The notes under the pieces were generated by a model. That model saw only the letters and a list, made by a program, of their open reading frames with translations. It made no database searches and was not told the DNA's origin. This document shows, one piece after another, positions 1 through 20,590 of a stretch of DNA of 64,000 nucleotides. How positions within the stretch are numbered: the first letter of the stretch is position 1; each line of letters starts with the position of its first letter. Origin of the DNA: Mytilus californianus (taxonomy: Eukaryota); the NCBI RefSeq assembly GCF_021869535.1, contig NW_026262690.1:83204001-83268000 (forward strand). Direction: 5' to 3'. The translations under genes and the position numbers were made by a program.

Positions 1-257
1 AAATACCAAATCATACTTAAAACTTACAGGAAAATTTGCATTAATATCTTTACTTGAGAAAAAGTCTGAATATAATCTAAAAAAAAAAAAAATTCAAACT
101 TGATCTGTGTTTTGTGGTAATAAGCATTTTGTATTAGTTTCATAATATTTGGCTGAGGCAAACTAAAGTTTGAGAACGGAAACCAACTTTGGGACGTACG
201 TAAGTACGGACAAGGGTAAAACTTAATGCCCCCTACTCTACGGCGGGGGCATAAAAA
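1..257 (-). mobile_element. 5' end of a non-autonomous Helentron-type (HINE-like) element, partial
   Basis: Hairpin atgccccc(226-233)/gggggcat(245-252) followed by an A-run (T-run on minus), with short gtac/gtcc-type simple repeats next to it. Same end architecture as the other HINE-like elements in the window. Confidence 0.45.
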
Positions 258-570
258 ACTCATATGTTATTGACGGTTAATCTTTTGGAATATTTTATGA
301 AATCATTGACAACTTGTCTGGACTCTGTAAGATAATTAATTTTACATATGGTTCATAGAAGACACACCTCTAGATGACTTTTTAAGGTTTTATCATTGCT
401 GAGTTGCTGTTTCATCAAATTTAACAACACACCTTCTTTTACTCCCATTTATTAGAATAAGTTATCTCTATACCAAACCCCATTCTTTATATATCTAAAA
501 GTTTTATATGTGTCAAAAGGGGTCTATAACTGAAATATGTTTAAAATGCCTCTTAATTATCTGTTATTAC

Positions 571-3500
571 CTTTATTCAACATCTCATCTGCTTCATCAA
601 GCACCAGCATCTTTATAGATCTTGTTCTCAAATTTCTTCTTTTTATCATATCTGTAGTGAAAAGTAAAATGTTGAAACTATCTCACAGGATGAAATGTGA
701 AGACTTTTTCATTTACAAATAAAATGCTTCGTTGGGGCGCAGCTTGATACGACCGCAGAGGTCGAACCCTGAACAGTTGGGGCAAGTATGGACACAACAT
801 TCAAGCTTGATACAGCTCTGAATTTGGATTGTTATTAAATATTTGACACAGCATAGGTTTCTGACACAGAAAGAATGTGGTCTAAGAACTTGAATTTTTT
901 TAATTTACCTATTATGGTCCAATGTCCAAAATCAAAATACATGGTTAGATTCAGCTTACAAAGAACCCCATATATTCAATTTTTGTTAAAATCAAACAAA
1001 GTTTAATTTTGGACCCCAACTTGGACAAACTTGAAAACTGGGCCCATAATCAAAAATCTAAACACATGTTTAGATTCAGCATATCAAATAACCCCAAGAA
1101 TTCAATTTTTGCTAAAATCAAACTAAGTTTAATTTTGGACCCTTTGGACCTTAATGTAGACCAATTTAAAAAATGGGACTTAAAATTAAAAATCTAAATA
1201 CACGGTTAGATTTGGAATATCAAAGAACCCCAATAATTCAATTTTTGATGAAATCAAACAAAGTTTAATTTTGGACCCTTTTGACCTCAATATGAAACAA
1301 TTTGATAGCGGGGCCCACAAATAAAAAATCTAAATTCATGGTTAGATTCAGCATATCAAAGTACCCCATATATTCAATTTTTGTTGAAATAAAAAAAAGT
1401 TTAATTTTGGACCCCAACTTAGTCCAACTTGAAAACTGGGCCCATAATCAAAAATCTAAACACATGTTTAGATTCAGCATATCAAAGAACCCCAAGAATT
1501 CAATTTTTGTTAAAATCAAACTAAGTTTAATTTTGGACCCTTTGGACCTCAATGAAGACCAATTTAAAAAACGGGACCCAAATTAAAAATCTAAAAACAC
1601 GGTTAGATTTGGCATATCAAAGAACCCCAATAATTCAATTTTTGATGAAATCAAACAAAGTTTAATTTTGGACCCTTTTGACCTCAATATGAACCAATTT
1701 GATAGCGGGGCCTACAAATAAATCAAAGCACGAAAGCGCTGTAAAGGCAGTTAATTACAGGTTGTGTGTATTTTAAGTCCAGTTATATCATTATCTTGCA
1801 TAGTACAGTGTACTTATCAGAGGTGGCTTTCAGTATTTAAGATTTAGAGTTCTCTAATGATATTGAATAAGTTTTATGAATGTCATATTCTGAGCACTAT
1901 ATGAAGGCGATTGTTCTCACTTGTTTATGAACTAGTGCATTATGTCCAGTTTGTACCTTTTTTATCTATGTTTATAGTCAAATTAGTTATCAAAGGTACC
2001 AGGATTATAATTTAATACGCCAGACGTGTGTTTCGTCTACATAAGACTCATCAGTGACGTTCAGATCAAAATAGTAATAAAGCCAAACAAGTACAAAGTT
2101 GAAGAGCATTGAGGACCCAAAATTCCAAAAAGTTGTGCCAAATATGGCTAAGGTAATCTATTCCTTGGATAAGAAAATCCTTAGTTTTTTCATTGGCAAT
2201 CATAACACATCTCCTTATTTATATAATGATCTATATTCAACGACCTCAGGTACAAAAAAAATGTATGTAACTAAACTATGATGGGAAACCTTTGACTTCT
2301 TTCTTTATATAAACTTTTGATTTGGTACCATAGAACTATGTAGAGTAAATGTACATTGCAACATGTCAACTCCAAGCAAAATTATATTTCCAAGCATAAA
2401 GTAATTTATGAATGAAATAAAATGCTCCGCTGGGGTGCAGCTTGATACGACCGCAGAGGTCGAACCCTGAACAGTTGGGGCAAGTATGAACACAACATTC
2501 AAGCTTGATTCAGCACTGAATTTGGATTGTAATTAAATATTTGACACAGAATAGGTTTCTGATACAGAATGAAAGTGGTCTAAGATACTTAAAAAAATTT
2601 AATTTACCTATTCAAACCATATCATTATTATTTGCTTTTATATATAAATCAGAAATAACAAATTTAAAATGGAAAATTTTAAAGAAAAAAAAGGAAAAAG
2701 AATCCCCCCCCCCCAAATTTTTTGAACCCCCTTATGATTCATCACCCCAAAACTCAATCCCAGCCTTCCCTTTGTGGTATGGTACCTTGCAGTACAATTT
2801 CAGAGAGATCCATACACTTGAACACATGTTATTGTCTGGAAACTAGAAAAATGCTTATTTTTGGCCCCTTATTCCTAAACTTTTTGGGCAATTACCCCCA
2901 AACTCAATTCCAGCTTTCCCTTTATGATATGGAACCTTGTAGTACAATTTCATAAAGATCCATACACTTACACACAAGTTATTGCCATGAAACTAGAAAA
3001 ATGCTTGTTTTTTGCCCCTTTTTTGCCCCTTTTTGGCCCCTTTTTCCTAAAATTTGGAGGCAATTACCCCCAAAAATCAATCCCAGCATTCCCTTTGTGA
3101 TATGGAACCTTGTGGTACAATGTCAGAGAGATCCATACACTTACACACAAGTTATGTCTGGAAGTTACATAAATGCTTATTTTTGGCCCCTAATTCCTTA
3201 ACTGTTGGTACCATAACCCCCAAAATCAATCCCCACTTTCCTTTTGTGGTATTGAACCTTATTTTAAAATTTCATTGAGATCCATTCACTTAAACTAAAG
3301 TTAGAGTGCGAAAACTAATGTGTCTTCGGACGACGACGCCGGACGACGACGACGCCAACGTCATACCAATATACGACCACAAAATTTTTTTTGCGGTCGT
3401 ATAAAAAGTTCTTAATTAAGAAATAAACTGATTCGCTGAGCGCAGCTGGATACACCCGCAGAGGTACTACCCTGAACAGCTGGGGCAAAAATGGACACAA

Positions 3501-6500
3501 TATTCAAGCTTGATACAGGTCTGAATTTGGAATGTAATTAAATATTTGACATATTATAGTTTCTGAATAAATGTAGTCAATGAACTTGAAATCGGTTATA
3601 TGAATTGAATTTATATTCAATTAAAGATTTCTTGCTGTTGTGCAATACTTAATAAATCTGTTGCCAGACTATAAACAAATAAAGTTCAATTTCTTCTCAA
3701 TGTCATATTTGAAATTTATGAAAATCAATAGGGAGATTACATCAATAGCTATAAATAATTCACCAAAGTTTCATGTGAACTGCTTAAAGCATTTTTGAGT
3801 TGTTGTCCAAAAACTGGAAAATCCCCCCTTTTTTAATGAATAAAACCCCATAACTCAGAAATGTAAAATCTAAAATTTATAAAATTCTAAAGGGAGCTTA
3901 CGGATTGATAATTTAGTCTTAGATGCAAGATTTTTTTATCAGTTGTTAGTGGCTTTGAACTAGCTGTCAGTAACTGAGAGTACTCTCAGATTTGTACTTA
4001 GTGTCTTTTTGTTGTTTGGATGTACAACTACCCGACCACGTCCACTTGTATTTGTATTTATCCATCTGATGAGTTTAGCCTCTTTCAACTGATTTTTATA
4101 GTTCTTTCTTATATTGTACTGTTACACCACTGTCCCAGGTTAGGGGAGGGTTGGGATCCCGCTAACATGTTTAAGCCCGCCACATTCTGTATGTACATGT
4201 ATGTGCCTGTCCCAAGTCAGGAGCCTATAAAAGTGTAATTCAGTGGTTGTCGTTTGTTTATGTGTTGCATATTTGTTATATTTGTTCATTTGTTTTACAT
4301 GTACATAAAATAGGCCGTTAGTTTTCTTGTTTGAATTCTTTTACATTGTCATTTCTGGGCCTTTGATAGCTGACTGTGCGGTATGGGCTTTGCTCATTGT
4401 TGAAGGCCGTACTGTGACCTATAGCTGTTAATTTCTGTGTCATTTGGTCTCTTGTGCATGTGTGGAGAGTTGTCTCATTGGCAATCATACCACATCTTCT
4501 TTTTTATATTTACATCAACAGATATAAAAAATTCACCAAAGTCAAGGTGAGACAACAAAACTTAGTTGTAAGATCTCTGAAATTTTTTACAGGGTACGAG
4601 TTTTTCTCATTGTTGGAGATTGTACGGTGACAGTAACACCTGTAACTGCTTAAACCCATTTCTTATGCACTTTAGTTTGATAAACTCACTGAATATCATA
4701 CCACATCTCCTTATTTTTATATGCATTACAATTTACATGTGCATGTAATTGTAAATATATATATATCAGAACAAAATTCATTGCGTCACTTTTATTTATG
4801 CATCCTTTGGCACAATACAAGTTCTAAAATTACACAACATAAAACAACTAAATGTTATTTCAGATGAAAGTTTGATTCAGTTCCATTCATAGGATTTATT
4901 AGAATTTTGTATGTTTTGCCAAGTCCAATAATTCGCTCTATGTGACATAGAGACATAGTTGACTAAACCACCAGGTGTCGAACATTCAAGAATTTTCAGT
5001 GTTTCTGTTTTTATTTGATGAAAAGGTTGCCTGAGCTCTAGGAGCTTTAGGTTTTATCACAGGATATTCTGTGCTGTCAATAATAATCCAAGTCGTAGGA
5101 AACTTTAATTTGAAGTTGGATGGTGAAAAATACCTGACTAAACCACTAGATGGCCAAGTGTTAGCCTCACACCACTGTTTAGACATAAAAACAATCCATG
5201 TATACACAATATTCTTAAAACTAGATTCAATCTAGAATCTAGACAGTTCAAAGTTGGTTGTATGATGCCTCAATTTCATCAAAGTCATAAAAAAACTGAT
5301 TTTCAACTGACACCCTATCAATTTGAAAATATATGTATCTCAAACAATGTGCTGCTGGTCCAAGTGTGGTCAAAACAAATAAAAATTTAGTATACAACTC
5401 TAAACCGGTATAAAAATGCATGGCTGTGTCACGTATCTTCATTTCAAAATTCTCTGCTGAAAACATAGGCATTGATGGTGTTTGCGTAATTCCATCTGTG
5501 AAGCTCAACATTAGCTCGGCAGTTGGTGGTGGACAGTCATAAATCCTTTCTGCAGTATGAATGACTCCTTCAGGAAAACCAACTTTACAATCAAAACTTT
5601 CCTCTAGATTTCTACTACAATATTCATCAAGTTTATTTCTTTTGTTTTCACAGGAAACTGCCCTGATTTTTCTTTTTGCGGACGATTCAGTCTCTTGCTT
5701 GGTCCAGGAAAATAGGCTGGGAATTGCAGTAGACTTAAGTCTCTGTATGGTGGGTTTGCGCCCTGAAAAAGGTTATAAAACATTAGTTTTTTTATAATTA
5801 AATGAACTTCCATTAGCAATGTATACTTTGTACTACCTGGCGAAATATTAACTAGATTTATTCATTACAATCTGGATAAAACTATGTTTGCCTGATTCAA
5901 TGTATGTTATGTAAATCCAAAGGACAAACAATGAGAGACTTATGCAACAAACGTACATTGTTTGTACCTAAATAACTATAATATAGATGAGAGCATGTCA
6001 TTGTTTTGTTCCTGTTAACATTGTCATTGATATTTTTCAAGAAAGTCTATGAGGCATAGCTTATGCATTCCTGTCATTACTACATTAGCATAATTACTGC
6101 TAAAATAATTCTCAGTATGATATACCTCTTGTAAGAAATCATTATAATTGTAGCAATCACCAAAAAATCTCAAACAGATCACATTGAATCGTAATTCAAA
6201 AAATTATGACGTCTTGAATTACCCACCCCCTTTTATTCTAAAACGATAATTGCGGTTGTAAACAGACTTTGGTTTATTCGCATGGCGATTACATATATAA
6301 CTATATATTTCACAAAGAAAATAGAGTTTTACCATGAATAGTTTCCTGCACGTAGTCTTTTTCAGTAAAACGTGCCTTGCAAACAACAGCTGATTGAGAT
6401 GGACTCCACGATATCATCGTGTTCTCGTCCAATCTGCGTATGGGCCATGGCGTTGATCCAACTTTTCCTTCTTTTTAAGTCATTTGGAAATGCATGTCCT

Positions 6501-9500
6501 CCTCTTAAATGACATCCAGGTACACAACAACAAGTACTTATCATCGTTAATTAAAAATATAACTGAAATAGTTGCACAGTGCAGAAACCGGAAGTAGAGG
6601 AACAGGATCCGCTACCACGGCGCCACATATTCAGGAACGATAATTTGCTACTTTATATAACTGCGAAAATAACGTTAGACGGGTTCACGTGCATAAACAG
6701 AAATGCGCTTTTAATTGTATAATATAATTCATGTTCAGTCGACCTTTAATTATTATATCAACGACTGAAATGATTTATAAACATCTAGATTGCAGATAAC
6801 ACTCGAAATTAACCCGAGCTCTTTCCACACGGAATTCAAATAATTCTAGTTTGTCAATCGGTTGACTGCTTATAATGCAAAATACTAATATATCAAAAGT
6901 TTTTAAAACTAACTAAACACAATGATCGTTTCTCTATTTCCCAATGTAAATGAAATGAAACAAAAAACATTTTATATCGCAATAAGAAGAGGAGAGAATT
7001 CAACATTTCCGGATCTACTTGGTGTCTAATGACCCCCCACGGAGATAAGTTGGATATCGCGGAAGGAAGGATTAACCCGGCAACTAGAAAGGCATTAAAG
7101 CACTGCCTTTAAAAATCTAAATACATGGTTAGATTCAGCATATCAAAGAACCTCGTATATTCAATTTTTGTTGAAATCAAACAAAGTTTAATTTTGGACC
7201 CCAATTTGGACCAACTTGAAAACTGGGCCCATAATCAAAAATCTAAATACATGTTTAGATTCAGCATATCAAAGAACCCCATATATTCAATTTTTGTTGA
7301 AATCAAACAAAGTTTAAATACTGGACCCTATCTTGGACCAACTTGAAAACTGGGCCCATAATCAAAAATCTAAACATATGTTTAGATTCAGCATATCAAA
7401 GAACCCCAAGAATTCAATTTTAGATGAAATCAAACAAAGTTAAATTTGGACCCTTTTGACCTCAATATGAACCAATTTGATAACGGGGTCCACAAATAAA
7501 AAATCTAAATACATGGTTAGATTCAGCATATCAAGGAACCCCATATATTTGAAAACTGGACCCAAAATTAAAAATCTAAATACACTGTTGGATTCGGCAT
7601 AACAAATAAATAAATGTGATCAAAGATTTACAACTCTAATGCGCCATACTGTGCAATTAAAGATTTCTTCTTGAAATTTTTCAATATTTGAAATTTGAAA
7701 AAAAAAATAATATTTGAAGAATAATTTTTTTAATTTCTGAAATCTGAAATGAGAAAAAATTGACCCCCCACAATTTCTTTTTACCCCCCCCCCCCCCCCC
7801 CCCTTTTTCCCCCCAAAAATTCTTTCCCTCAAGATATGGTCATAATCTCAATTCAAATTTCCAATGGAGTTGGCAACCATAATTACCCATTTAAATTTAC
7901 CATAGTGCTAACTTAATCTATTTTAAAATAGAATTAAAAATATAGTGTCAAATCTTTCATATGGATTTTTTTGTAAAAAAAAAGATGCAACATTTGCAGA
8001 TATTTTTACTGGTCTTCCTTTATAAATATGCATTTCTTTAAACATAATTTAAAAGCAGTGTAAGGGAAGTTACCAAAACGTTGTATTTGTATTACCTCCC
8101 TTACACTGTTTTAAATTATCTTTATTGTTCATTAACCATTACTTTATACATAATTTAAAAGCAGTGTACGGGAGAAAATTTCAATGATGTATTTGATTTA
8201 TCTCCCTTACACTGCTTTAAATTATGTTTTGTACTAAAGTATTTGTCCATTACCCAGGACAACCTTGTTTTTCCCCCTAATTCCTAAACTGTTTGAGCCA
8301 TAACCCCCCAAAGCAAATCCTAACCATCCCTTTGTGGTATGGAAACTTGTAGTATAATTTCAGAGAGATCCATACACCGTTCCACAGTTATTGTCTGGAA
8401 ACTAGAAAATGCTTATTTTTGGCCCCTAATTCCTTAACTGTTGGTACCATAACCCCCAAAATCAATCCCAACCATTCTTTTGTGGTATTTAACCTTATGG
8501 TCAAATTTCAAAAAGATCCATTTACTTAAACTAAAGTTAGAGTGCGAAAACCAATGTGTCTTCGGACGACGACGACGCCGCCAACGTCATACCAATATAC
8601 GACCACAAAATTTTTTTGCGGTCGTATAAAAATAACATGATTAAAGGAATAACGCAAACAAATAAAAGAAGAATTGGTGTCCATAATACACAATTCCCCA
8701 ATCACACTATCACATTTCCAGATTCAGCGATCCACAAAATCTTGGTGCAAACTCCTTATTTAGCAAACATTAAAAAAAAAAATTAAAGTTGAATTTGTGT
8801 ACAAAGTTTCAAGTTTTATTAATATGACCACAACTTCAGTGTTATCTACTGTATACCAAAACTTTAAACTCATAGATAGCACAGAGAAGCAGACACATAG
8901 ACAGTTAAACAAAATGCGCAATTGTAACTTTTTTTCATTTACAATATTTTCAAATCGAAAATATAAGATTAAAAAGTCACCAGCTGAAATTACTCAACCA
9001 TCATGGAAGAGAGGTAATGTGTATACTAAATTAGTAATCAGAATTTTTTTTCAAAAGCAACATGCTCAATGAAAAGTATGTGTCAAGATTTATGCTGGGC
9101 AAAACCAGATGTTTGGTGCCATATACTGTATCAAAAGATATGACTTGTAATTGCAGAGAAAAATAACACGAAACTTGTTACAGACAGATATACAGAGGAA
9201 AATTAGTATTCTCCTCTCCTTTGGAGCGTAGTATAAAAAATCAATGTTAAATGTTACCAAATACTCTGCCTGGTGTTCCTGATACCACATGTTGACCATA
9301 ATCCAGTTTTCTGATGTCTTCGCCAATGTTTGTTCCTCCAATACAGGAATGGCATTGTACATTCATGTAATCCCCCAAAGCTAGAATAACCTGAAATAAA
9401 CATGATGTGTCAAGTCATACATTGTATCTTCTTCAAGTTTCAAATAATTTCTTACATTAGAAAAACAAGCAATCTGAGAGTATTGCATGGCAATACATAG

Positions 9501-12500
9501 TCCCCTACCGGTCAAAAATTAATTGTACTGGAACAAAATGCTAACTTGATCTATAACTTGTCATGACCATAACTCTGCAAAAAATCATCAAATCGAAACA
9601 AAATTCAAACTTGGTCTGTAACTTGTCATGATAAAACTATATACCAATTATCAAATCAATATCTTCAAGCATGACGAAAAAAAGTGCGGAAAACTGATTA
9701 TTTGAGTGAATTTTTTAAGTCCAAGGACCATAACTCTGCACAAAATCATCAGACCGGAACAAAATTCGAACTTGATCGGAGTGCAAACCTAAAGTCCCCT
9801 TTCGACGGTCGACGGTACGGGACTAAGAATTAAGACATGATCATGAATAACCAGTTTTAAATAAGACGAGAAAAATACCGTAGAGACATTCAAAACTCAT
9901 TAGTAGAAAAGAAACTGATAACACCATGGCAAAAAAGAAAAACAACAGTGTAAGATTACATTACTTTTAAGCAAAAATGTCCTTCTGTCAATATACAAAA
10001 TTGAATTCAATCAAAATTGTTGCTTGGCCTATAATGAAAACTGACATATTAAATTCATTAATGCAAAAAATATATTATGCTATGAATTTGAAACACTCAT
10101 ATATTTTGAACTTGAAGAAAAATATTTCCCCAATAAAAACTAAAAGTGTAATACCAATTACACATATATTTTGCATATATTTTAATATCAAATACCAATA
10201 TCATATTAACACTCATCATTTAAAACTTAACTGACAAGGCTACCTTCTGTATTTGTGTAGCAAGTTCTCTGGTAGGAGATAATATTAATGCTTGTGTTTC
10301 TCTAACTTGTGTGTCCAGACATTGTAGAATGGATATGGAAAATGTTGCTGTCTTTCCTGTTCCAGACTGAGCTCTAGAAAAAAAAAATGTTTATCTTATA
10401 AATGTAGAATGCACCATGTACTCAACATTTTTTGGACAAGGATAGTCAGAAATTCTTAGAGAAACCATATCCATTTTTTTTCATTCTTTAAGACTTTTTA
10501 ATACAAACCAACATGACAAGAGTCATATTTAGATTCACTTTTTGGTTAAAACTTTTGAAATTAAATGTTAGTAAATTTAATTGATTCAGCTGATAATAAT
10601 TTCAATGCATCTTTGTAGTCATCAGTTCAGAAAATGATGAGCCCAGTCTTTTCTTTTGTGGACACTTAGACTTGTGTTAGTGAGAATCCAGAATGCATAT
10701 ATACATGTGTATTAAAAAAAACTGAAATTTAAGCAAATCAAATAATTTAGTTAAACCAACATAACATGTTCTTAAAAAAAATCTTACATCTATCTGATAA
10801 TAGATACATTTTATTTAATAACAATACAGATATTTTATTTTTTAAGAAGTATCTGATAATTAGTACATTTTATTTAATAACCATACAGATTTTTTTATTT
10901 TTACGAAGTAAAATAAGATAAGATCCAATTCACTTATTTCTTAATTTTGAAAATGTAAAGTAAATTACAAAATGTATAGAAGAATTGCCCTGAAAGCTCC
11001 TGGTACTAATATGTCTTTTGATTGAGTTAAGCCATTTAAATTGATATTTTATAGTGTGTCTTTCTATGTTGTGATGTTACACTATTGTTTCAGGTAGGGT
11101 GAAGGTTGGCGCCTATTAAAATGTTTAAACCCACTGCATCTGTTTGCACCTGTCCTAAGTCAGGAACCTGATGTTCAGTGGTTGTCGTTTGTTGATGTGG
11201 TTCATAAGTGTTTCTCGTTTCTTGTTTTTTATATAGATTAGACCGTTGGTTTTCCTGTTTGAATGGTTTTACACTAGTCATTTTTGGGGCCCTTTATAGC
11301 TTGCTGTTCAGTGTGAGCCAAGGCTCTGTGTTGAAGGCCGTACTTTGACCTATAATGGTTTACTTTTACAAATTGTGACTTGGATGGAGAGTTGTCTCAT
11401 TGATACTTATACCACATCTTCTTATATCTAAGTATAGGGTGTATACCAAAGAATTCAGTTAGTCTGACTTACTGTGCAATAACATCTCTTCCTTTAACAA
11501 TAGGTTTGACAGCTCTTTGTTGAATAGCTGATGGTTTCTCAAATCCTACAAATATAATATCATGAAAAATAAAGTTTTGATATGAATTTCTGCTCTGGAA
11601 TGTACATTACATGTCCTAAATATACAAAATTTCTTTCTGTTACAATCATATATATGTAGCTATTGATCCTCATCATTTTACCCAAGGTTAGAATTCATTG
11701 AATTCCTGAAAGTTCTGAATTTATGTAGATACAAGTTTAATTAGTCATTGTTAGTGAATGTGTGTGTGGTTCCTCTTTTATGCTAAAACAACTAAATTGA
11801 TAAGTTACATATGATACATGCATACAAAATATTTTAAACATTCTGAAATAATTTTATATACTACATGTATATTTTGAAAAAAATTTCACTTCAACTTAGT
11901 CAAACTTATCTTCTAAAACTACAACAACATATTTAGAACATGAGCTACAAAAGTAATGATAAATTAGAGGTAAACTATAAGAAAAGGGTACTTGCATACC
12001 AAACTAGAGGCTCTCAAGAGCCTGTGTTGCTCACCTGTATTTGGAAATCATGTAAAATAAGGTTAAAATCATAATTAATAGTATTAGATATTAAACACAT
12101 GTTAGATATTATAATGATATCTAAGATAATAACAAAAACTGCAAAATTTTTGTAAAATTACTAAATCAGGGGCAGCAACGGGTTGTTGGATTCGTCTGAA
12201 AATTTCAGGGCAGATAAATCTAAATCTGATGAACATTTTTGCCACCTGTCAGATTTGCTCTAAATGCTTTAGTTTCAGAGATATAAACCAAAAACTGCAT
12301 TTTACCAATATGTTCTATTTTTTACCAAGTCGGCCATGATGGTTGGAAGGCGGGGTCATCGCACAAATTTTTAAACTAGATACCCTTAAATGATTATGGC
12401 CAAGTATGGTTAAATTTGTCTCAGTAGTTTCAGGGAAGAAGATTTTTGTAAAAGATTACAAAAAATTGTTAAAAATTGACTATTAAGGGCAATAACTCCT

Positions 12501-15500
12501 AAAGGGGTCGACTGACAATTTTGGTCAAGACAACTTATTTGTAGATCTTACTTTGCTGAACATTATTGCTGTTTACAGTAATCTCTATCTATAATAATAT
12601 TCAAGATAATAACCAATAAAATGCTTCGCTGGGGCGCAGCTTGATACGACCGTAGAGGTCGAACCCTGAACAGTTGGGGCAAGTATGGACACAACATTCA
12701 AGCTTGATACAGCTCTGAATTTGGATTGTTATTAAATATTTGACACAGCATAGGTTTCTGACACAGAAAGAATGTGGTCTAAGAACTTGAATTTTTTTAA
12801 TTTACCTATTATGGTCCAATGTCCAAAATCAAAATACATGGTTAGATTCAGCATATCAAAGAACCCCATATATTCAATTTTTGTTAAAATCAAACAAAGT
12901 TTAATTTTGGACCCCAACTTGGACAAACTTGAAAACTGGGCCCATAATCAAAAATCTAAACACATGTTTAGATTCAGCATATCAAAGAACCCCAAGAATT
13001 CAATTTTTGCTAAAATCAAACTAAGTTTAATTTTGGACCCTTTGGACCTTAATGTAGACCAATTTAAAAAACGGGACTTAAAATTAAAAATCTAAATACA
13101 CGGTTAGATTTGGAATATCAAAGAACCCCAATAATTCAATTTTTGATGAAATAAAACAAAGTTTAATTTTGGACCCTTTTGACCTCAATATGAACCAATT
13201 TGATAGCGGGGCCCACAAATAAAAAATCTAAATTCATGGTTAGATTCAGCATATCAAAGAACCCCATATATTCAATTTTTGTTGAAATCAAAAAAAGTTT
13301 AATTTTGGACCCCAACTTGGACCAACTTGAAAACTGGGCCCATAATCAAAAATCTAAACACATGTGTAGATTCAGCATATCAAAGAACCCCAAGAATTCA
13401 ATTTTTGTTGAAATCAAACAAAGTTTAATTTTGGACCCCAATTTGGACCAACTTGAAAACTGGGCCAAAAATCAAAAATCTAAATACATGTTTAGATTCA
13501 GCATATCAAAGAACCTCATATATTCAATTTTTGCTAAAATCAAACAAAGTTTAATTTTGGACCCTTTGGACATTAATGTAGACCAATTTAAAAAACAGGA
13601 CCCAAATTAAAAATCTAAAAACATGGTTAGATTTGGCATATCAAAGAACCCCAATAATTCAATTTTTGATGAAATCAAACAAAGTTTAATTTTGGACCCT
13701 TTTGACCTCAATATGAACCAATTTGATAGCGGGGCCTACAAATAAAAAATCTAAATACATGGTTAGATTCAGCATATCAAAGAACCTCATATATTCAATT
13801 TTTGTTGAATTCAAACAAAGTTTAATTTTGGACCCCAATTTGGACCAACTTGAAAACTGGGCCCATAATCAAAAATCTAAATACATGTTTAGATTCAGCA
13901 TATCAAAGAACCCCATATATTCAATTTTTGTTGAAATCAAACAAAGTTTAATTACTGGACCCTATCTTGGACCAACTTGAAAACTGGGCCCATAATCAAA
14001 AATCTAAACACATGTTTAGATTCAGCAAATCAAAAAACCCCAAGAATTCAATTTTTGTTAAAATCAAACTAAGTTTAATTTTGGACTCTTTGGACCTCAA
14101 TGTAGACCAATTTAAAAAACAGGACCCAAAATTAAAAACCTAAATACACGGTTAGATTTGGAATATCAAAGAACCCCAATAATTCAATTTTAGATGAAAT
14201 CAAACAAAGTTTAATTTTGGACCCTTTTGACCTCAATATGAACCAATTAGATAACGGGGTCCACAAATAAAAAATCTAAATACATGGTTAGATTCAGCAT
14301 ATCAAAGAACCCCATATATTCAATTTTTGTTGAAATCAAACAAAGTTTAATTTTGGACCCCAATTTGGACCAACTTGAAAACTGGGCCAAAAATCAAAAA
14401 TCTAAATACATGTTTAGATTCAGCATATCAAAGAACCTCATATATTCAATTTTTGCTAAAATCAAACAAAGTTTAATTTTGGACCCTTTGGACATTAATG
14501 TAGACCAATTTGAAAACTGGACCCAAAATTAAAAATCTAAATACACTGTTAGATTCGGATGAGAAAAAATTGGCCCCCCACAATTTCTTTTTATCCCCCC
14601 CCCCCCCCTTTTTCCCCAAAAAAAATTCTTTCCCTCAAGATATGGTCATAATCTCAATTCAAATTTCCAATGGAGTTGGCAACCATAATTACCCATTTAA
14701 ATTTACCATAGTGCTAACTTAATCTATTTTATAATAGAATTAATAAAAATATAGTGTCAAATCTTTCATATGGATTTTTTTGTAAAAAAAAAAAGATGAA
14801 AACATTTGCAGATATTTTTACTGGTCTTCCTTTATAAATATGCATTTCTTTAAACATAATTTAAAAGCAGTGTAAGGGAAGTAACCAAAACGTTGTATTT
14901 GGATTACCTCCCTTACACTGTTTTAGATTATCTTTATTGTTCATTAACCATTACTTTATACATAATTTAAAAGCAGTGTAAGGGAGATAATTTCAATGAT
15001 GTATTTGATTTATCTCCCTTACACTGCTTTAAATTATGTTTTGTACTAAAGTATTTGTCCATTAACCAGGACAACCTTGTTTTTCCCCCTTTTTTGCCCC
15101 TAATTCCTAAACGGTTTGAGCCATAACCCCCCAAAGCAAATCCTAACCATCCCTTTGTGGTATGGAAACTTGTAGTATAATTTCAGAGAGATCCATACAC
15201 CGTTCCACAGTTATTGTCTGGAAACTAGAAAATGCTCATTTTTGGCCCCTTTTTGGCCCCTAATTCCTTAACTGTTGGTACCATAACCCCCAAAATCAAT
15301 CCCAACCTTCTTTTTGTGGTATTTAACCTTATGGTCAAATTTCAAAAAGATCCATTCACTTAAACTAAAGTTAGAGTGCGAAAACCAATATGTATTCGGA
15401 CGACGACGACGCCAACGTCATACCAATATACGACCACAAAATTTTTTTGCGGTCGTATAAAAACTGCAAAATTTCCTTAAAATTACCAATTCAGGGGCAG

Positions 15501-18500
15501 CAACCCAACAACAGGTTGTCAGATTTGTCTAAAAATTTCAGGGCAGATAGATCTTGACCTGATAATCAGTTTTACCCTATTTCAGATTTACTCTAAATGC
15601 TTTGGTTTCAGAGATATAAGCCAAAATCTACATTTTACCCCTATGTTCTATTTTTAGCCATGGCGACCATCTTGGTTGGTTGGCGTGGTCATCGGACACA
15701 TTTTTTAAACTAGATACCCTAATGATGATTGTGGACAAGTTTGGTTAAATTTGGCCCAGTGGTTTCAGAGGAGAAGATTTTTGTAAAAAGCTAACGACAA
15801 CGGACGCCAAGTGATGAGAAAAGCTGTGTACAGGTAAATATCAACTACTGAACAGATCTTCATTGACTGTAAGCAAATCATCTGAACAGTATTGAATTTA
15901 CTGCAGTGATTAAGTCTGAAATTGACTGAAAGACCGTACTCGACATGCTTGACTCAATCATTTATTTTGTTCAGTCCTTTAAGAGTTGTCAAAATTGTTT
16001 TACTAGTCATGACTATAGCTAGCTAACAGACACTTCTTCTATCACAGGTAATACCTGCTTCATAATCATAAATGGGGAAAACTTTTTTTACTATCAGCTG
16101 CTCTTGCGCATTACCCTGTTCCTAATCTTGTTTTTAAATGCTGCAATGTTGAAAGTCATGCGATTTCCCAAAACTTTGTATATCTGATTACCAAAAATGA
16201 ATAATGACAACAATACAATGAAAATAAAAATTGTATTATGAATTTATGGACTTAGTACTCTTTCACACTCACAGGTAGTCCAAAAAATTATGACATCTTG
16301 AAAGGCTTTTATATTTTTTTGCTTTGACACCTTACAGCGACGTCATAAGATATAACGCCGAACTCATATTTTCAGTTGGACTTTGAGAGAGAATTTACTG
16401 CTTTATTAAAATGTTTAGCTGATTTCTCCTTTAGATGCTGTACTTTAGGAGTATAAAATATACTTTTGCACCAAACTCGGTAAAATTTACAAAATATAAA
16501 ATAAACATTCCGGAAACTCGGGTCTGTCAAATTTTACTGAGTTTGGTGCAAACATTCATTTCATTCTCTCCTAAAAATAAATCAGATAAATGTTTTTAAA
16601 AGAGCAGTAGATAATCGTCCGCCTTGGATGGAATTGTAACTTATTTTATCATTTCTTTAGGGAATTATTGAGAATATTTTGTGCAATCAAACACATAAAA
16701 GGTAAGAATTTGTATATATGCAAAAATTTCTAGCCTTCAATGAAAATTTTATGGCTAAATTGGGTCTCAAAGTTGAGAGCAAAAATTTCTAGCCTTCAAT
16801 GAAAATTTTATGGCTTAATTGGGTCTCAAAGTTGAGAGCAAAATTCTCTCTCAAAATCCAACCAAAAAAAATGTCTTTAGATTTATGACGTCACTGTAAG
16901 GCATCAAAGCAAAAAAATATAAATCCTTTCAAGATGTCATAATTATTTGAGGGTCTTAATGGGGGTACCTTCATGACGAATAACGGTAAAAAAAATTGGC
17001 CAAATGACCTTAACTGTAATTTTTGGTGCATAACGATAAAATGTACACTTTCTTTAACAGTGTTCCCGCCTGCCCTAAATAGAAGGGCGGCCCGCCCTTG
17101 GTGCCCTTACCCCCGCCCTTCTGCCCTCCAAAGTAAAAGAATGCCCCCCTCTTCCTTTTCAAAAAAATAAAATTTCCAAATTTCATGCCTACCGGCGTTT
17201 CCGGTAAAATTGTTACCTGATTGTGTAACACTAATTAACTGACAATGGGATTAAGTTAAATACCTAATGCTTTGGCAGTTTTATCACCTTTGTTAATGAC
17301 TGTTTACTGCTAATTAGTGGATTTAAGATAATTGAACAAATACTAGATATTTAATACAGAATGAAATGTCCACATGTTATCCATTTTGTAATGTTTATTT
17401 ACAGCATGTACACCATAAAAAATTTATTTCAGTAGGCATAAAATAAAAAATAAAATCTTAAACAATTTTAAAGGCATACATAGTTTTGACTTAATTGGTA
17501 AAAAAAATGTTTTGTTTCATAACCATGAGTATGAAATTTAAAGAAGAATCAAAGAAATTTGTACTTTGAACATAACAAGATTCACTTCCTGTTTTACTTC
17601 TTGTATTTTATAATCCTCCTGACATATGAGCACTCAACAAATTTATTTTTAACAATGATGGAGAAAAAAGTAACTGTTTATACCTTCTGCAATATATTAT
17701 TGCATCAATATAATATGATCATCTCCTGTCTCACCTGTCATATTTATAAAACTCCTTACTGAGGAGCACTTTGGTGTGCACTTAAAAATACTTTTTTGTT
17801 ACAATTCAAATGATAATAAATAACTCTCAATAACATATATACTATATGTTTGAACAAGTAATTTAAATGTAGATTATTTAATTACATTAAACATTCAATT
17901 TTGCATGTATAACTCCATCTTTCAAAACTACTTGTTTATTTTGGTATAAGTTATAAATATTGAAATTTCTGATGATTATTTTCCTTACCAAATGTACAAG
18001 TTTGTTTAGAATAACATCAAAATGATATGCTTTGCTTCATGGTATGATAATTTGATAAAAAAAATTCTTTCTGGAACCAACATCAAGAACACATTAATTT
18101 CTAAATATGGTTTAAATACAACTAATGTTCTCCAGCTGAGCCTAGCAATATTCAAGGTAATTTATACACTGTCCAACATTGCCCTTAAAATCTGGGTTAA
18201 AACGCTAAAGTGCCCTTTCAGACAACTAGCACCCTTCTGCCCTAAGATTCAAGCTGGAACACTGTTTAAGGTTTGCAGGAATGAAAAAAAATGCCCATCA
18301 AAATCCAAAAAATATTTTATCTTTCTGAAACACAAAATGCATTTAACTTTTATATATCTAGTGGATACCAGGACTTAAAACTTTCCAAACTGCACAGGTT
18401 AGTCTGTACTCAGAGTAGTTTTTGAGGTCTACACAGCCATTTTTGTCCATTTGTTATGATGAACCTTAAGACGATAAAAAGATCGACTGATTTTGACAAA

Positions 18501-18997
18501 TCACGTTAATTTTTTTCCAATAACGATAATTATTTGAGACCTCTGATGAATCACAATTAGGATATTTTGACACTGTAAAATTTTAACCAATTTGATGCTA
18601 ACGGTAGCCGAAAATGACCGTTTGACGTCTTATTTGGACTAACTCACAGGCAACGCACGACTCATATTAGTAGATAATTACTGACGTGATCCTCTCTAAA
18701 ATTGAGACTTGTCTCATATACCTTATGTTTTTGGTTTATTGGAACCTATAGTCAACAAAATGCATGAACTTAAGGGCCAAAGAAACGATTAACCCAAGAT
18801 GACTGAACGACACAAATACATAATTTTACGTTTATAGTATACTGTAATAAAGTCATGTATATACCGTAAGCATATATTCCTCGAAGTAGTTCTTCTCTCA
18901 GGCCCATGTTATCAAACGTTGGTGTAACATCAACCTCTTCACTAGTTTCAAATTCAACATTTTTAAGATCCTCGGTCATCACGCGTCTTCCTGCCAT
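571..18997 (-). CDS. EIF4A3: Eukaryotic initiation factor 4A-III (DEAD-box helicase DDX48, exon junction complex core), exons 1-5; the gene continues beyond the left edge
   Basis: Exons 18997-18865, 11545-11473, 10373-10244, 9390-9258 and 651-571 are all GT-AG with matching phases. They translate to [100 protein letters not shown]. The [19 protein letters not shown] and DEMLNKG segments match eIF4A3 rather than eIF4A1/2. Confidence 0.96.
1950..2190 (-). repeat. Retrozyme/Penelope-associated dispersed repeat carrying a hammerhead ribozyme
   Basis: Non-coding repeat-like segment containing the hammerhead fold at 2017-2060. Boundaries are approximate. Confidence 0.55.
2017..2060 (-). ncRNA. Minimal type I hammerhead ribozyme
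   Basis: Minus strand reads ACGTCA-CTGATGA-GTCT(tatgt)AGAC-GAA-AC(acac)GT-C^TGGCGT. Stem I is 6 bp with one G.U, the CUGAUGA/GAAA core is intact, stem II is 4 bp, stem III is 2 bp, and the GUC cleavage triplet ends at 2023. Confidence 0.8.
2419..3407 (-). mobile_element. HINE-like family B, copy lacking the 126/136-bp array but with about four ~150-170-bp units of a second internal repeat
   Basis: Same termini as the other B copies (aaaatgct..gcagcttgatacgaccgcagaggtcgaacc at 2419; gcggtcgtataaaaa at 3393-3407). Repeated ccccaaaa..aatcccagc..ccctttgtg..gagatccatacac units at ~2746, 2895, 3068 and 3218. Confidence 0.75.
3428..3590 (-). repeat. Degenerate 3'-terminal fragment of HINE-like family B
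   Basis: Diverged copy of gcgcagcttgatacgaccgcagaggtcgaaccctgaacagttggggcaag..ttcaagcttgatacag. Confidence 0.6.
3905..4512 (+). repeat. Abundant unclassified dispersed repeat (family R1)
   Basis: Shares cctgtcc.aagtcagga, gttgaaggccgtac..tgacctata and ggagagttgtctcattggcaatcataccacatcttct with 11025-11430 and 32640-32925. Many short copies of the terminal motif occur elsewhere in the window. Confidence 0.7.
4796..6544 (-). pseudogene. THAP-domain + HTH/DDE_Tnp_4 (ISL2EU/PIF-Harbinger-related) transposase pseudogene
   Basis: CCVPGC..HAFP.D..RRKSWI, then after a frameshift WSP..VVCKARF; intron 6332-5763; [11 protein letters not shown]; [14 protein letters not shown]; IIDSTE..KP..QATFSS.KNRNT; TPGGLV.YVS; then a deletion, followed by [13 protein letters not shown] and a stop at 4796-4798. 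Several frameshifts. Confidence 0.8.
9462..9828 (-). mobile_element. HINE-like element family D
   Basis: gtattgcatggcaatac hairpin, agtcccct sub-terminal repeats and internal aacttgatct..aacttgtcatga repeats. Second copy at 62243-62916. Confidence 0.65.
11025..11430 (+). repeat. Dispersed repeat family R1
   Basis: Near-identical over ~280 bp to 32640-32925; ends in ggagagttgtctcattg..ataccacatcttctt. Confidence 0.75.
12618..15462 (-). mobile_element. HINE-like family B, copy 2 (uninterrupted)
   Basis: Complete terminal structure (sub-terminal atacgaccgc repeats, (gtc)n microsatellite, 3' hairpin), two internal tandem arrays and an internal double palindrome at ~14850-15040. Confidence 0.85.
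12842..14560. repeat. Higher-order tandem array of 126/136/136-bp subunits (A, B, C)
   Basis: Unit starts (ttagat) at 12842, 12968, 13104, 13240, 13366, 13492, 13627, 13763, 13889, 14016, 14152, 14288, 14414 and 14549, giving the order ABC AABC AABC AB. Confidence 0.9.
16282..16948. mobile_element. Fold-back/MITE-like element with long outer inverted repeats and a nested inner inverted repeat
   Basis: aaaaaattatgacatcttgaaagg..cttacagcgacgtcataa (16282-16350) is inverted at ~16880-16948. An inner inverted repeat spans ~16396-16490 / 16530-16620, and a 59-bp tandem duplication lies at ~16721-16840. Confidence 0.7.
17058..18264. mobile_element. Non-autonomous DNA transposon with CAGTGTTCC termini and a 5-bp TSD
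   Basis: cagtgttcccgc at 17058 and gctggaacactg ending at 18264, flanked by tttaa on both sides. GCCCT-rich subterminal repeats at both ends. Confidence 0.7.
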
Positions 18998-19168
18998 TTT
19001 GCAAATTTCTTGATCAGTGTCAATATTTTTCTTGTAATTCATCATTTTGTTTCATTTATTTTAAGCGCGCAATAGATTATGACTTTTAATAGAAAAAATC
19101 AAAGCGCTAGAGCACAGTAGGCCTAAGACTTACAATAAATAAAGCAAGTGCTGCTGATTTTTAAGGAT

Positions 19169-20590
19169 TTCTACTTCTACTTCTACCGGTTAGTGACCAC
19201 CGTCATCATGTTGACTATTCTGTCACTTTTGGGTGTGCGCAAATATAATTTTGATTAAAGTAACAAACAAAAAAAGGAGCTATACAAATATTTAACCATA
19301 ATATTAAGTGGGGATTAAAAACAAGGGCTTTTGATTGATTTGTTTGTCAGGAGCCTCTTGAACGATTCAAGGCTGCTGACAGATGTACTTGTAACTGATG
19401 AGGGTAAGGCATTCCAATTCCTGATGGTCCTCGGGTAGAATGACTCTTTCCTTGTTGTCGTGTTACATTGTGGGATCTGAAAAGAGTTTGTGCCCATATT
19501 TCTTGAGATCCTGTCCGGTGGAACGAGTTTGTGGCTTGCTGCAACGTTGACCTCCTGATTGTTGATCTTATACAGCATTGATAGTCGTGCGCTTCTCCTT
19601 CTATCTTCAAGTGGTGTCCACATTAGTTGTTCCAACATATCAGTAACGGATGATCTGTTACTGTACCGGTTTGTTACATATCTGGCAGATCTCCTTTGTA
19701 CCATTTCTAACTTGTGTTTATCTTTTTGGAGGTATGGATCCCATAGAGAGCTGGCATACTCGACTGTTGGTCTAACGAGGGAGATGTAGGCCTTTTCTTT
19801 GATATCGCTGTTTGAGATATTGAGATTTCTTTTGAGAAATCCGATGGTTTTATTTGCCTTGGCACAGATGTTTCCGATATGTTTTTCCCATTTAAGGTCT
19901 GATGTTATAGTTACTCCTAAGTATTTTGCAAATGTTATGTGCTCCAAAGTGTGGCTATGTAAACGGTAATCCTTTATAATAGGTGTTCTGTTCTTTGTTA
20001 CTGATAATACCTGACATTTATCTGGATGGAATTGCATCATCCATTTTTCTTCCCAGACAGCCAACTTGTCTAAATCTTCCTGGAGGGTATTATCATCTGA
20101 TGTTACTGTGATGTATGCAATGGTGTCATCTGCAAATAGCCTCACAGTTGATTTAATATTTTCTGGCATGTCGTTTATATAGAAGAGGAAGAGGCTGGGT
20201 CCTAGCACAGATCCTTGTGGTACCCCAGACTCTACATCAATGGAGTCAACATCAATGTTTCCCCTTCTATTAGTACTCTTTGGGTTCTCTCAGATAGGAA
20301 GCTTTTAATCCAGTCGTTTGTTTTTCCTCTTATTCCATAGTCACGGTTGAAGTTTGTGGGTTAGTAGACTATGGTCGACCTTGTCAAATGCCTTCGAAAA
20401 GTCCATGATTAGGCAGTCTGTTTGTTGGCCACTATCAAGGTTTTTGGTGATGTCGTCGATGAATTCTATCAGCTGGGTTTCACATGATAGTTTCTTCCGA
20501 AATCCATGTTGAAGGTCATGCAGGATGTTGTTTTTATCTGCATGGCACATGATATGGCTGGTTACTATGTGCTTCATCTTTGCTTCACAT
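19169..20590 (-). mobile_element. 5'-truncated CR1/L2-group non-LTR retrotransposon (reverse transcriptase C-terminal half)
   Basis: ORF 20577-20341 (QHGFR..SCETQL..DFSKAFDKVDH) and ORF 20208-19315 (LGPSLFLFYIND, FADDT, KYLGV, LVRPTVEYASSLWDP) are separated by frameshifts. (GTAGAA)3 tail at 19169-19186. Confidence 0.9.

What the first reader, a model, noticed from the sequence alone, without database searches (positions are those of the whole stretch)
2017..2060. Minimal hammerhead ribozyme in sense orientation within the eIF4A3 pre-mRNA
Seen: a complete type I hammerhead (stem I ACGUCA/UGGCGU, CUGAUGA, stem II GUCU/AGAC, GAA, 2-bp stem III, GUC cleavage site at 2023) on the same strand as eIF4A3, inside intron 4. 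Known: minimal hammerheads with very short stem III mark Penelope-like elements and retrozymes, and cleave mainly as dimers through a palindromic stem III loop. Here the loop region reads ACACACGU rather than a perfect palindrome, so dimer activity may be attenuated. Inference: co-transcriptional cleavage could influence splicing of an essential exon-junction-complex gene, or selection may have tolerated only a weakened copy.
Basis: partly seen in the sequence, partly recalled or inferred. Interest (0 to 1): 0.7.

Follow-up and report, generated by a model that had tools for sequence, protein, structure and literature searches.

The report
Hitchhiking hammerhead ribozyme in eIF4A3 intron
The self-cutting RNA motif is really there and points the same way as the essential gene eIF4A3, but it is a piece of a common mussel "retrozyme" repeat carried into the intron by a 5.4-kb jumping DNA element present in about 170 near-identical copies, so it is most likely an ordinary and probably weak passenger, not a gene-specific switch.

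Summary
Observation confirmed. A complete type I hammerhead lies on the minus strand at 2060..2017. It is on the same strand as eIF4A3, inside the 8.6-kb intron between coding exons 4 and 5. Rfam RF00163 scores it 29.5 bits, below the gathering score of 34.

It is not a local invention, and it is not a Penelope element or a retrozyme array.
- It sits in a 208-bp fragment (0.59 unit) of the 354-bp tandem retrozyme of this mussel genome, which is probably Mytilus californianus. 4152 hammerheads in the genome keep the canonical ACGCGCGUC.
- That fragment lies 260 bp from the 3' end of a 5.4-kb non-coding element (window 1721-7115). The element has fixed termini, subterminal inverted repeats, a 3' stem-loop, T-run ends, no target duplication and a central 161-bp satellite. 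These are the hallmarks of a Helentron-type non-autonomous element.
- The non-palindromic ACACACGU loop is shared by 167 copies. A sister subfamily of 62 copies keeps GCGC. The change therefore predates this insertion.

Folding predicts that the GCGC versions form the double hammerhead and this version does not. No read data could be obtained, so cleavage is untested.

Most likely this is a neutral, weak or inert passenger. Earlier notes of this scan report other hammerhead and satellite elements elsewhere in this genome.

The parts
2017..2060 (-). Type I hammerhead motif; predicted cleavage 3' of C at 2023 (between 2023 and 2022)
   Evidence: Sequence; RF00163 at 29.5 bits, full-length alignment
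1981..2188 (-). Retrozyme-derived fragment: 208 bp, or 0.59 of the 354-bp monomer (monomer positions 228-354 plus 1-80)
   Evidence: 90-94% identity to tandem retrozyme monomers in L025, L032 and L051; boundaries
1721..7115 (-). 5.4-kb non-coding carrier element, Helentron-type non-autonomous (HINE)-like
   Evidence: Aligns to the full copy in L019 over its whole length: 96.7% for 2-4393 and 93% for 4453-6055. Both termini present in 12 of 12 sampled copies.
7088..7115 (-). 5' terminus: run of five T, then a palindromic subterminal repeat that includes the 10-nt TAAAGGCAGT
   Evidence: this terminus occurs 613 times in the genome
1721..1751 (-). 3' terminus: inverted 10-nt repeat (1751-1742), 5-bp stem-loop (1740-1727), terminal TTGATT
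2744..3303 (.). Central tandem array of the carrier (period 150-173 bp here, 161 bp in the L019 copy)
   Evidence: TRF
4989..5772 (-). Two open frames (174 and 81 aa) that look like remnants of a THAP / DDE_Tnp_4-type transposase; a lead only
   Evidence: no Pfam hit; Atlas best cluster THAP at 0.88
652..9257 (-). Host intron of eIF4A3 (8606 nt). Upstream exon ends at about 9258 (GTPGRVF). Downstream exon starts at about 651 (DMIKRR...[10 protein letters not shown]).
   Evidence: Six-frame motif search and splice-site context
900..1720 (.). 136-bp satellite array into which the carrier inserted; it continues at 7117-7700
   Evidence: TRF; the two flanks are 85-88% identical to each other in register

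Best explanation
The hammerhead is a passenger. A 0.6-0.8-unit piece of the mussel's 354-bp hammerhead retrozyme became part of the 3' region of a non-autonomous DNA element that looks like a Helentron (HINE-like). In one lineage of that element, two CpG-to-CpA transitions changed helix III/loop 3 from ACGCGCGU to ACACACGU. That lineage then amplified to about 170 copies. One copy landed, in the sense orientation, in a satellite array inside intron 4 of eIF4A3.

Shown:
- homology to the retrozyme;
- the structure of the carrier;
- copy numbers;
- the shared loop genotype;
- the position in the gene.

Inferred: in the pre-mRNA this single hammerhead, with no partner and an unstable 2-bp helix III, cleaves slowly or not at all. 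It therefore has little or no effect on eIF4A3 and is effectively neutral.
For: 1. The window copy is one of 156 exact 38-nt matches. 167 copies share the ACAC loop and the retrozyme-carrier junction.
2. Only 208 bp around the motif match the retrozyme monomers, whose hammerheads recur every 354-355 bp in L025, L032 and L051.
3. The carrier is one unit with fixed ends. 12 of 12 sampled copies have both termini (4.4-9.4 kb) and no target duplication. All 16 copies listed on contig C1 have a same-strand 5' terminus 4-12 kb upstream.
4. The terminal features match the HINE description in PMC4067079:
   - terminal T strings;
   - a 5' subterminal repeat a few nt from the end;
   - a 3' repeat followed by a stem-loop;
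   - a central tandem array;
   - a T-rich target.
   The carrier split a 136-bp satellite within its T-run.
5. The sister subfamily (62 copies) keeps GCGC and is more diverged: 2.0% within it against 0.6% within the ACAC group.
6. The double-hammerhead dimer is predicted for the GCGC versions only. The monomer hammerhead fold has probability 0.1% or less in all versions. In 251 nt of native context the minimum-energy fold is not a hammerhead.
7. No second hammerhead lies in window 1-20000.
8. Literature: a short helix III with a palindromic loop works through dimers (PMC4209133). A mussel retrozyme hammerhead cleaves at only about 0.1 per min (PMC7229834).
Against: - No RNA data could be obtained, so 'weak or inert' rests on thermodynamics and on analogy.
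- PMC7229834 reports that invertebrate retrozyme hammerheads, including one cloned mussel repeat, self-cleave without needing dimeric constructs. The monomer fold energy is unchanged by the loop change (-5.4 against -5.7 kcal/mol). Monomeric activity near 0.1 per min is therefore not excluded.
- The Helentron assignment is structural only. The inverted repeat is 10 nt, against the usual 12-15. No Rep/helicase partner was found next to the listed termini.
- 3 of the 8 fixed differences between subfamilies fall within the 44-nt hammerhead. This could be CpG decay or something more.
Confidence: 0.72

Rival explanations
1. One reading: the sense-strand hammerhead cuts nascent eIF4A3 pre-mRNA and so modulates splicing or output. 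Alternatively, selection at this gene tolerated only a weakened ribozyme.
For: - The orientation is sense and the core is intact.
- The cleavage site is 1371 nt upstream of the 3' splice site, so there is a kinetic window.
- Intronic ribozymes can compete with splicing, as shown for CPEB3 (PMC10919898, abstract seen).
- Retrozymes are depleted from introns in Xenopus (bioRxiv 10.64898/2026.07.22.740005).
Against: - The loop genotype is a family trait of 167 copies, not a local adaptation.
- The insertion is young: about 0.6% divergence among sampled copies.
- There is no partner hammerhead in the scanned part of the gene.
- The dimer fold is lost and the monomer fold is disfavoured.
- At 0.1 per min or less, and typical polymerase speeds (my own knowledge), only a few per cent of transcripts would be cut before the 3' splice site is made.
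Confidence: 0.07
2. The 5.4-kb carrier is itself a giant retrozyme-like or Penelope-mobilised retroelement. It would be transcribed in the hammerhead-sense direction and the ribozyme would process its RNA.
For: - The hammerhead is in the same orientation as the element, at a fixed distance from the 3' end, in two subfamilies.
- Some copies carry two hammerheads 354 bp apart (L057, L062).
- Retrozymes are thought to be Penelope dependants.
Against: - No 5' truncation: every sampled copy has both termini.
- No target duplications in 12 copies.
- No terminal direct repeats, and inverted subterminal repeats instead.
- No RT or GIY-YIG frame: no open frame of 75 aa or more has a Pfam hit.
- Only one hammerhead per unit in 22 of 24 sampled copies, so no ribozyme-bounded unit exists.
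Confidence: 0.12
3. The motif acts in trans. The ACAC hammerhead in the pre-mRNA pairs through helix III with abundant canonical retrozyme RNA and is cleaved as a heterodimer.
For: - Retrozyme circRNAs are reported at very high levels in mussel tissues (PMC7229834).
- 6 of the 8 helix III positions would still pair (sequence).
Against: The predicted heteroduplex is weak: -3.0 kcal/mol against -13.3 for GCGC:GCGC. There are no data for it.
Confidence: 0.03

Closest known systems
Mussel non-LTR retrozymes (Cervera and de la Pena 2020, PMC7229834)
   Same: - The hammerhead is of the same family: about 5000 copies in M. galloprovincialis and 4152 canonical copies here.
- 208 bp around the motif are 90-94% identical to the 354-bp monomers.
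- Helix sizes and the short helix III are the same.
   Different: - Only 0.59 of a unit is present, with a single hammerhead and no tandem array, so no ribozyme-bounded RNA can be released.
- Loop 3 reads ACAC instead of the palindromic GCGC.
- It was moved by a different vehicle.
Helentron-associated non-autonomous elements (HINE/DINE-1; PMC4067079) and oyster HINEs carrying satellite arrays (PMC7492417)
   Same: - Terminal T strings and subterminal inverted repeats.
- A stem-loop near the 3' end.
- A central tandem repeat array.
- Insertion in a T-rich target without duplication.
- Non-coding, with hundreds of copies.
   Different: - The inverted repeat is 10 nt, not 12-15.
- The 3' repeat lies about 25 nt from the end, not 38-60.
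- The element is large (4.4-9.4 kb).
- It carries a retrozyme hammerhead and transposase-like remnants.
- No Rep/helicase partner was identified.
Penelope-like element hammerheads (PMC4209133)
   Same: A type I hammerhead associated with a mobile element. A short helix III implies action as a dimer.
   Different: - There is no RT/GIY-YIG frame and there are no pLTR direct repeats.
- This motif has a helix III and a loop, unlike the min-HHR.
Intronic self-cleaving ribozymes of vertebrate genes (CPEB3 HDV-like ribozyme, PMC10919898; amniote intronic hammerheads, from my own knowledge)
   Same: A sense-strand ribozyme in an intron of a protein-coding gene.
   Different: Those are single-copy and conserved at the orthologous locus. 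This one is one of about 170 near-identical recent transposon copies.

Membership tests
Hammerhead ribozyme type I (Rfam RF00163) | Catalytic core CUGANGA ... GAA, with a cleavage triplet NUH | tested here: met
   CUGAUGA, GAA and GUC are all present
Hammerhead ribozyme type I (Rfam RF00163) | Three helices with helix I open and loops on II and III | tested here: met
   Helix I 6 bp, helix II 4 bp, helix III 2 bp plus a 4-nt loop; full-length model alignment 1-45
Hammerhead ribozyme type I (Rfam RF00163) | Score at or above the curated gathering threshold (34 bits) | tested here: not met
   29.5 bits. Canonical copies of the same genome reach 34.4-44.8 bits.
Hammerhead ribozyme type I (Rfam RF00163) | Self-cleavage | not testable with these tools
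The thermodynamic fold is not hammerhead-like.
Metazoan non-LTR retrozyme | Tandem repeats of 170-400 bp, each with a hammerhead | tested here: not met
   One hammerhead within 20 kb. The fragment is 208 bp of a 354-bp unit.
Metazoan non-LTR retrozyme | Sequence homology to the species' retrozyme monomers | tested here: met
   90-94% identity over 208 bp
Penelope-like element | RT plus GIY-YIG ORF, and terminal direct repeats (pLTR) holding the hammerhead | tested here: not met
   No long ORF. The ORF pieces have no Pfam hit. The ends are inverted, not direct.
Helentron non-autonomous element (HINE) | Subterminal inverted repeats, with the 5' one a few nt from the end | tested here: inconclusive
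   A 10-nt perfect inverted pair lies 5 nt from the 5' end and about 25 nt from the 3' end. This is shorter than the 12-15 nt of PMC4067079.
Helentron non-autonomous element (HINE) | Stem-loop between the 3' repeat and the 3' terminus; T strings at the ends | tested here: met
   A 5-bp stem-loop at 1740-1727, five T at the 5' end and TT at the 3' end
Helentron non-autonomous element (HINE) | Insertion in a T-rich or TT target without target-site duplication | tested here: met
   No duplication in 12 copies. The window copy sits in the T-run of a 136-bp satellite unit whose neighbouring units are uninterrupted.
Helentron non-autonomous element (HINE) | Autonomous partner with Rep/helicase(/endonuclease) sharing the termini | tested here: inconclusive
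   The genome has 126 Helitron_like_N matches. None lies within 10 kb of the roughly 100 listed 5' termini. No further DNA could be fetched.
PIF/Harbinger transposon | Terminal inverted repeats and a 3-bp target duplication | tested here: not met
   No terminal inverted repeat beyond the subterminal 10-mer; no 3-bp duplication
Gene-specific intronic regulatory ribozyme | Locus-specific sequence conserved at the orthologous intron | tested here: not met
   The same 38-mer occurs at 156 places. Orthologous introns of other species were not available.

The most novel reading that the evidence does not exclude
A rolling-circle-type DNA transposon has picked up a hammerhead retrozyme module and now spreads it. 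Some copies carry a complete unit bounded by two hammerheads and could seed new circRNA-producing loci. Purifying selection against ribozyme cleavage of host transcripts may explain why the dimer-dead ACAC lineage (167 copies) outgrew the GCGC lineage (62 copies) and can sit in sense orientation in an essential gene's intron.
Probability: 0.1. Interest if true: 0.55.

Novelty: new member of a known kind. Interest (0 to 1): 0.3.

Why it matters
The result mainly serves as a caution. A textbook-perfect ribozyme in an essential gene's intron can simply be transposon cargo.

Its modest positive value is a natural pair of otherwise near-identical hammerheads: GCGC loop (62 copies) and ACAC loop (167 copies), both carried by one element family. 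This pair would allow two tests:
- whether the palindromic loop 3, and so dimerisation, matters in vivo;
- whether sense-intronic ribozymes are selected against.

It also documents a DNA transposon carrying a retroelement's ribozyme module in a bivalve.

Tried and rejected

2. **5'-truncated retroelement.** I first read the carrier this way because BLAST alignments broke at varied points. I rejected it. The breaks come from variable internal arrays, and all copies have both termini.

3. **Classical Helitron on the plus strand** (A|TC start). Rejected in favour of the opposite, Helentron-like orientation, which fits the published layout.

4. **Transposase-like frames.** Pfam on five open frames of the carrier gave nothing. 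The Atlas gave only a sub-threshold THAP lead.

5. **Rep partner.** Searched by co-location and not found.

6. **Earlier findings.** A look-up by sequence was blank.

7. **Joined protein model.** eIF4A3 was identified exon by exon from the six-frame translation. I deliberately did not build or search a joined protein model, so orthologous introns in other assemblies were not retrieved.

Full report
**1. What is in the sequence**

The plus strand at 2017-2060 is the reverse complement of a hammerhead. Read on the minus strand from 2060 to 2017 it gives:
- helix I of 6 bp;
- the CUGAUGA core;
- a 4-bp helix II closed by five nucleotides;
- GAA;
- a 2-bp helix III (AC/GU) closed by ACAC;
- the GUC triplet, whose C is base 2023;
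- the returning strand of helix I.

Infernal aligns it end to end with RF00163 (Hammerhead_1) at 29.5 bits. E is 5.7e-5 in 1.1 kb and 0.001 in 20 kb. This is under the gathering score of 34, which is why the default scan of the window is empty. The lost bits are in helix III, where the model expects the CGCG-type palindrome.

By energy alone the 44-mer does not prefer the hammerhead fold (z = 0.07). This is also true of the canonical copies.

**2. The host gene**

Six-frame motif searches find eIF4A3-type exons on the minus strand:
- the ATG exon, near 18997-18863;
- [11 protein letters not shown], near 11543;
- AQSGTGKT...PTRELA, near 10372;
- ...GTPGRVF, ending at 9259;
- DMIKRR...[10 protein letters not shown], from 652.

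The intron with GT at 9257 and AG ending at 652 is 8606 nt long. The hammerhead lies in it on the gene's strand, and its cleavage site is 1371 nt upstream of the 3' splice site.

The genome has 1.65 Gb in 175 records, with a largest record of at least 142.2 Mb. This fits the published Mytilus californianus assembly: 176 scaffolds, 1.65 Gb, largest 142.4 Mb (PMC9710001). Earlier notes of this scan also call it a mussel.

**3. The motif belongs to the mussel retrozyme family**

An Rfam-guided search of the whole genome finds many type I hammerheads. In several loci they recur every 354-355 bp on one strand (L025, L032, L051). These are the tandem non-LTR retrozymes described for M. galloprovincialis: about 5000 hammerheads, repeats of 350-390 bp, abundant circRNA, kobs about 0.1 per min (PMC7229834).

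Pattern counts in the genome:
- 4152 hammerheads with the canonical ...GAAACGCGCGUC;
- 200 with ...GAAACACACGUC;
- 156 exact copies of the window's 38-mer.

The window's motif differs from the canonical one in three places:
- Two G-to-A changes at CpG sites in helix III/loop 3, turning ACGCGCGU into ACACACGU.
- One G-to-A change that turns the outermost G-U of helix I into A-U.

**4. The copy is not a retrozyme; it is cargo**

Only 208 bp around the motif (window 2188-1981) are homologous to the retrozyme monomer. They cover monomer positions 228-354 plus 1-80 at 90-94% identity. That is 0.59 of a unit with one hammerhead.

The fragment lies 260 bp from the end of a much larger repeat. The window's copy runs from 7115 to 1721 and aligns along its whole length with a 6057-bp copy in L019.

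All 12 sampled copies have the same 5' and 3' termini, at 4.4-9.4 kb apart. The length differences come from a central array of 161-bp repeats and from internal insertions. All 16 copies listed on contig C1 also have a same-strand 5' terminus upstream.

There are no target-site duplications and no long open frames. The few open frames of 75 aa or more have no Pfam match. Two of them look like THAP and DDE_Tnp_4 remnants, but this is a lead only.

**5. What kind of element the carrier is**

In the hammerhead-sense orientation the element has:
- a string of five T at the start, followed by a palindromic subterminal repeat;
- a perfect 10-nt inverted copy of that repeat about 25 nt from the 3' end;
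- a 5-bp stem-loop after the inverted copy, and then the terminal TTGATT.

The window copy split a 136-bp satellite that continues on both sides. The break is in the satellite's T-run.

Terminal T strings, subterminal inverted repeats, a 3' stem-loop, a central tandem array, a T-rich target and no duplication are the published hallmarks of Helentron-associated non-autonomous elements (PMC4067079). Such elements are known to carry satellite-like arrays in oysters (PMC7492417).

The fit is not perfect. The repeat is 10 nt rather than 12-15, and I found no Rep/helicase partner next to the listed termini. I therefore call the carrier Helentron-like with moderate confidence.

The earlier idea of a 5'-truncated retroelement was an artefact of alignments breaking in the internal array. 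A Penelope element or a 'giant retrozyme' is disfavoured by the fixed ends, the lack of duplications, the inverted ends and the absence of an RT frame.

**6. The loop genotype is a family trait**

The junction between the retrozyme piece and the carrier's last 260 bp occurs 167 times with the ACAC loop and 62 times with the canonical GCGC loop.

The GCGC copies form a sister subfamily:
- They share the last 469 bp at 96-98% identity.
- They appear to share the 5' terminus, judged from the coordinates.
- They have a different interior, and their retrozyme piece is 270 bp long.
- Two of the 12 sampled carry 1.76 units, and so two hammerheads 354 bp apart.

In the shared 470 bp, mean divergence is 0.6% within the ACAC sample, 2.0% within the GCGC sample and 3.3% between them. 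There are eight fixed differences, and three of them lie in the hammerhead. The ACAC sample was chosen as the best BLAST hits, so its divergence is biased low.

The ACAC change therefore arose once, in a source copy, before the burst that put a copy into eIF4A3. It says nothing about selection at this gene.

**7. Likely activity**

PMC4209133 states that a 1-2-bp helix III with a small palindromic loop impedes monomeric cleavage, and that two nearby copies form an active dimer.

ViennaRNA reproduces this:
- The homodimer minimum-energy structure of the GCGC versions is the double hammerhead with an 8-bp intermolecular helix III (-29.5 kcal/mol).
- The ACAC version folds differently (-23.9 kcal/mol).
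- The helix III duplex is worth -13.3 kcal/mol for GCGC:GCGC, -2.3 for ACAC:ACAC and -3.0 for ACAC:GCGC.
- The monomeric hammerhead fold costs the same in all versions and is rare (probability 0.1% or less).

In 251 nt of native context the predicted fold is not a hammerhead. No second hammerhead lies in the 20 kb of the gene that I could scan.

On the other side, PMC7229834 reports that invertebrate retrozyme hammerheads cleave without dimeric constructs. Slow monomeric cleavage therefore cannot be excluded. Even at 0.1 per min, only a few per cent of transcripts would be cut before the polymerase reaches the 3' splice site. That estimate is my inference from typical elongation rates, not a tool result.

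**8. Limits**

- The part of the gene beyond the window's start was not scanned.
- No consensus of any element was built.

**9. Verdict**

The motif is transposon cargo shared by about 170 loci. A specific role in eIF4A3 is unlikely (about 7%).

It is a new member of known kinds: a retrozyme-type hammerhead in a satellite-carrying, Helentron-like element of a bivalve.

Other notes of this scan describe hammerhead, retrozyme and satellite elements elsewhere in the same genome. One of them reads a comparable element of about 200 copies as a retroelement. For the family studied here, my data do not support that reading.

Noticed in passing
window 900-1720 and 7117-7700; also 717-913: The carrier is nested in a 136-bp satellite array. 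Next to that array lies a 197-bp segment 92% identical to an internal part of the carrier (L019 copy positions 5155-5352). A second such segment is at 12615-12810. The host array may itself be the centre of an older related element. L012 and L023 show the same segment joined to 136-bp repeats.
   Followed up: partly
window 8264-8632 and 15076-15463: Two further short arrays, 75-84% identical to the carrier's 161-bp satellite, lie in eIF4A3 introns. They are probably remnants of older related insertions.
   Followed up: no
L057 and L062 (= L035), sense positions about 1127 and 1481: Some GCGC-subfamily copies carry a complete 354-bp retrozyme unit bounded by two canonical hammerheads inside the DNA-transposon-like carrier. 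If transcribed, such a locus could release a unit-length RNA.
   Followed up: partly
window 4989-5772 (minus strand): Open frames of 174 and 81 aa show an AIPSLF-type motif, a YTGL...F..L motif and an IIDSTEYP motif. These recall THAP, HTH_Tnp_4 and DDE_Tnp_4 transposases. Pfam finds nothing, and the Atlas best cluster is THAP at 0.88.
   Followed up: partly
G000 whole genome: The carrier's 25-nt 5' terminus occurs 613 times. Only about 229 copies carry the hammerhead junction, so further subfamilies without this ribozyme module probably exist.
   Followed up: no
window 14843-15044 and 8036-8232 (plus strand): Clusters of weak, sub-threshold matches to plant and animal microRNA precursor models (best 30 bits against a gathering score of 55). 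They are probably hairpins of repeats and chance matches.
   Followed up: no
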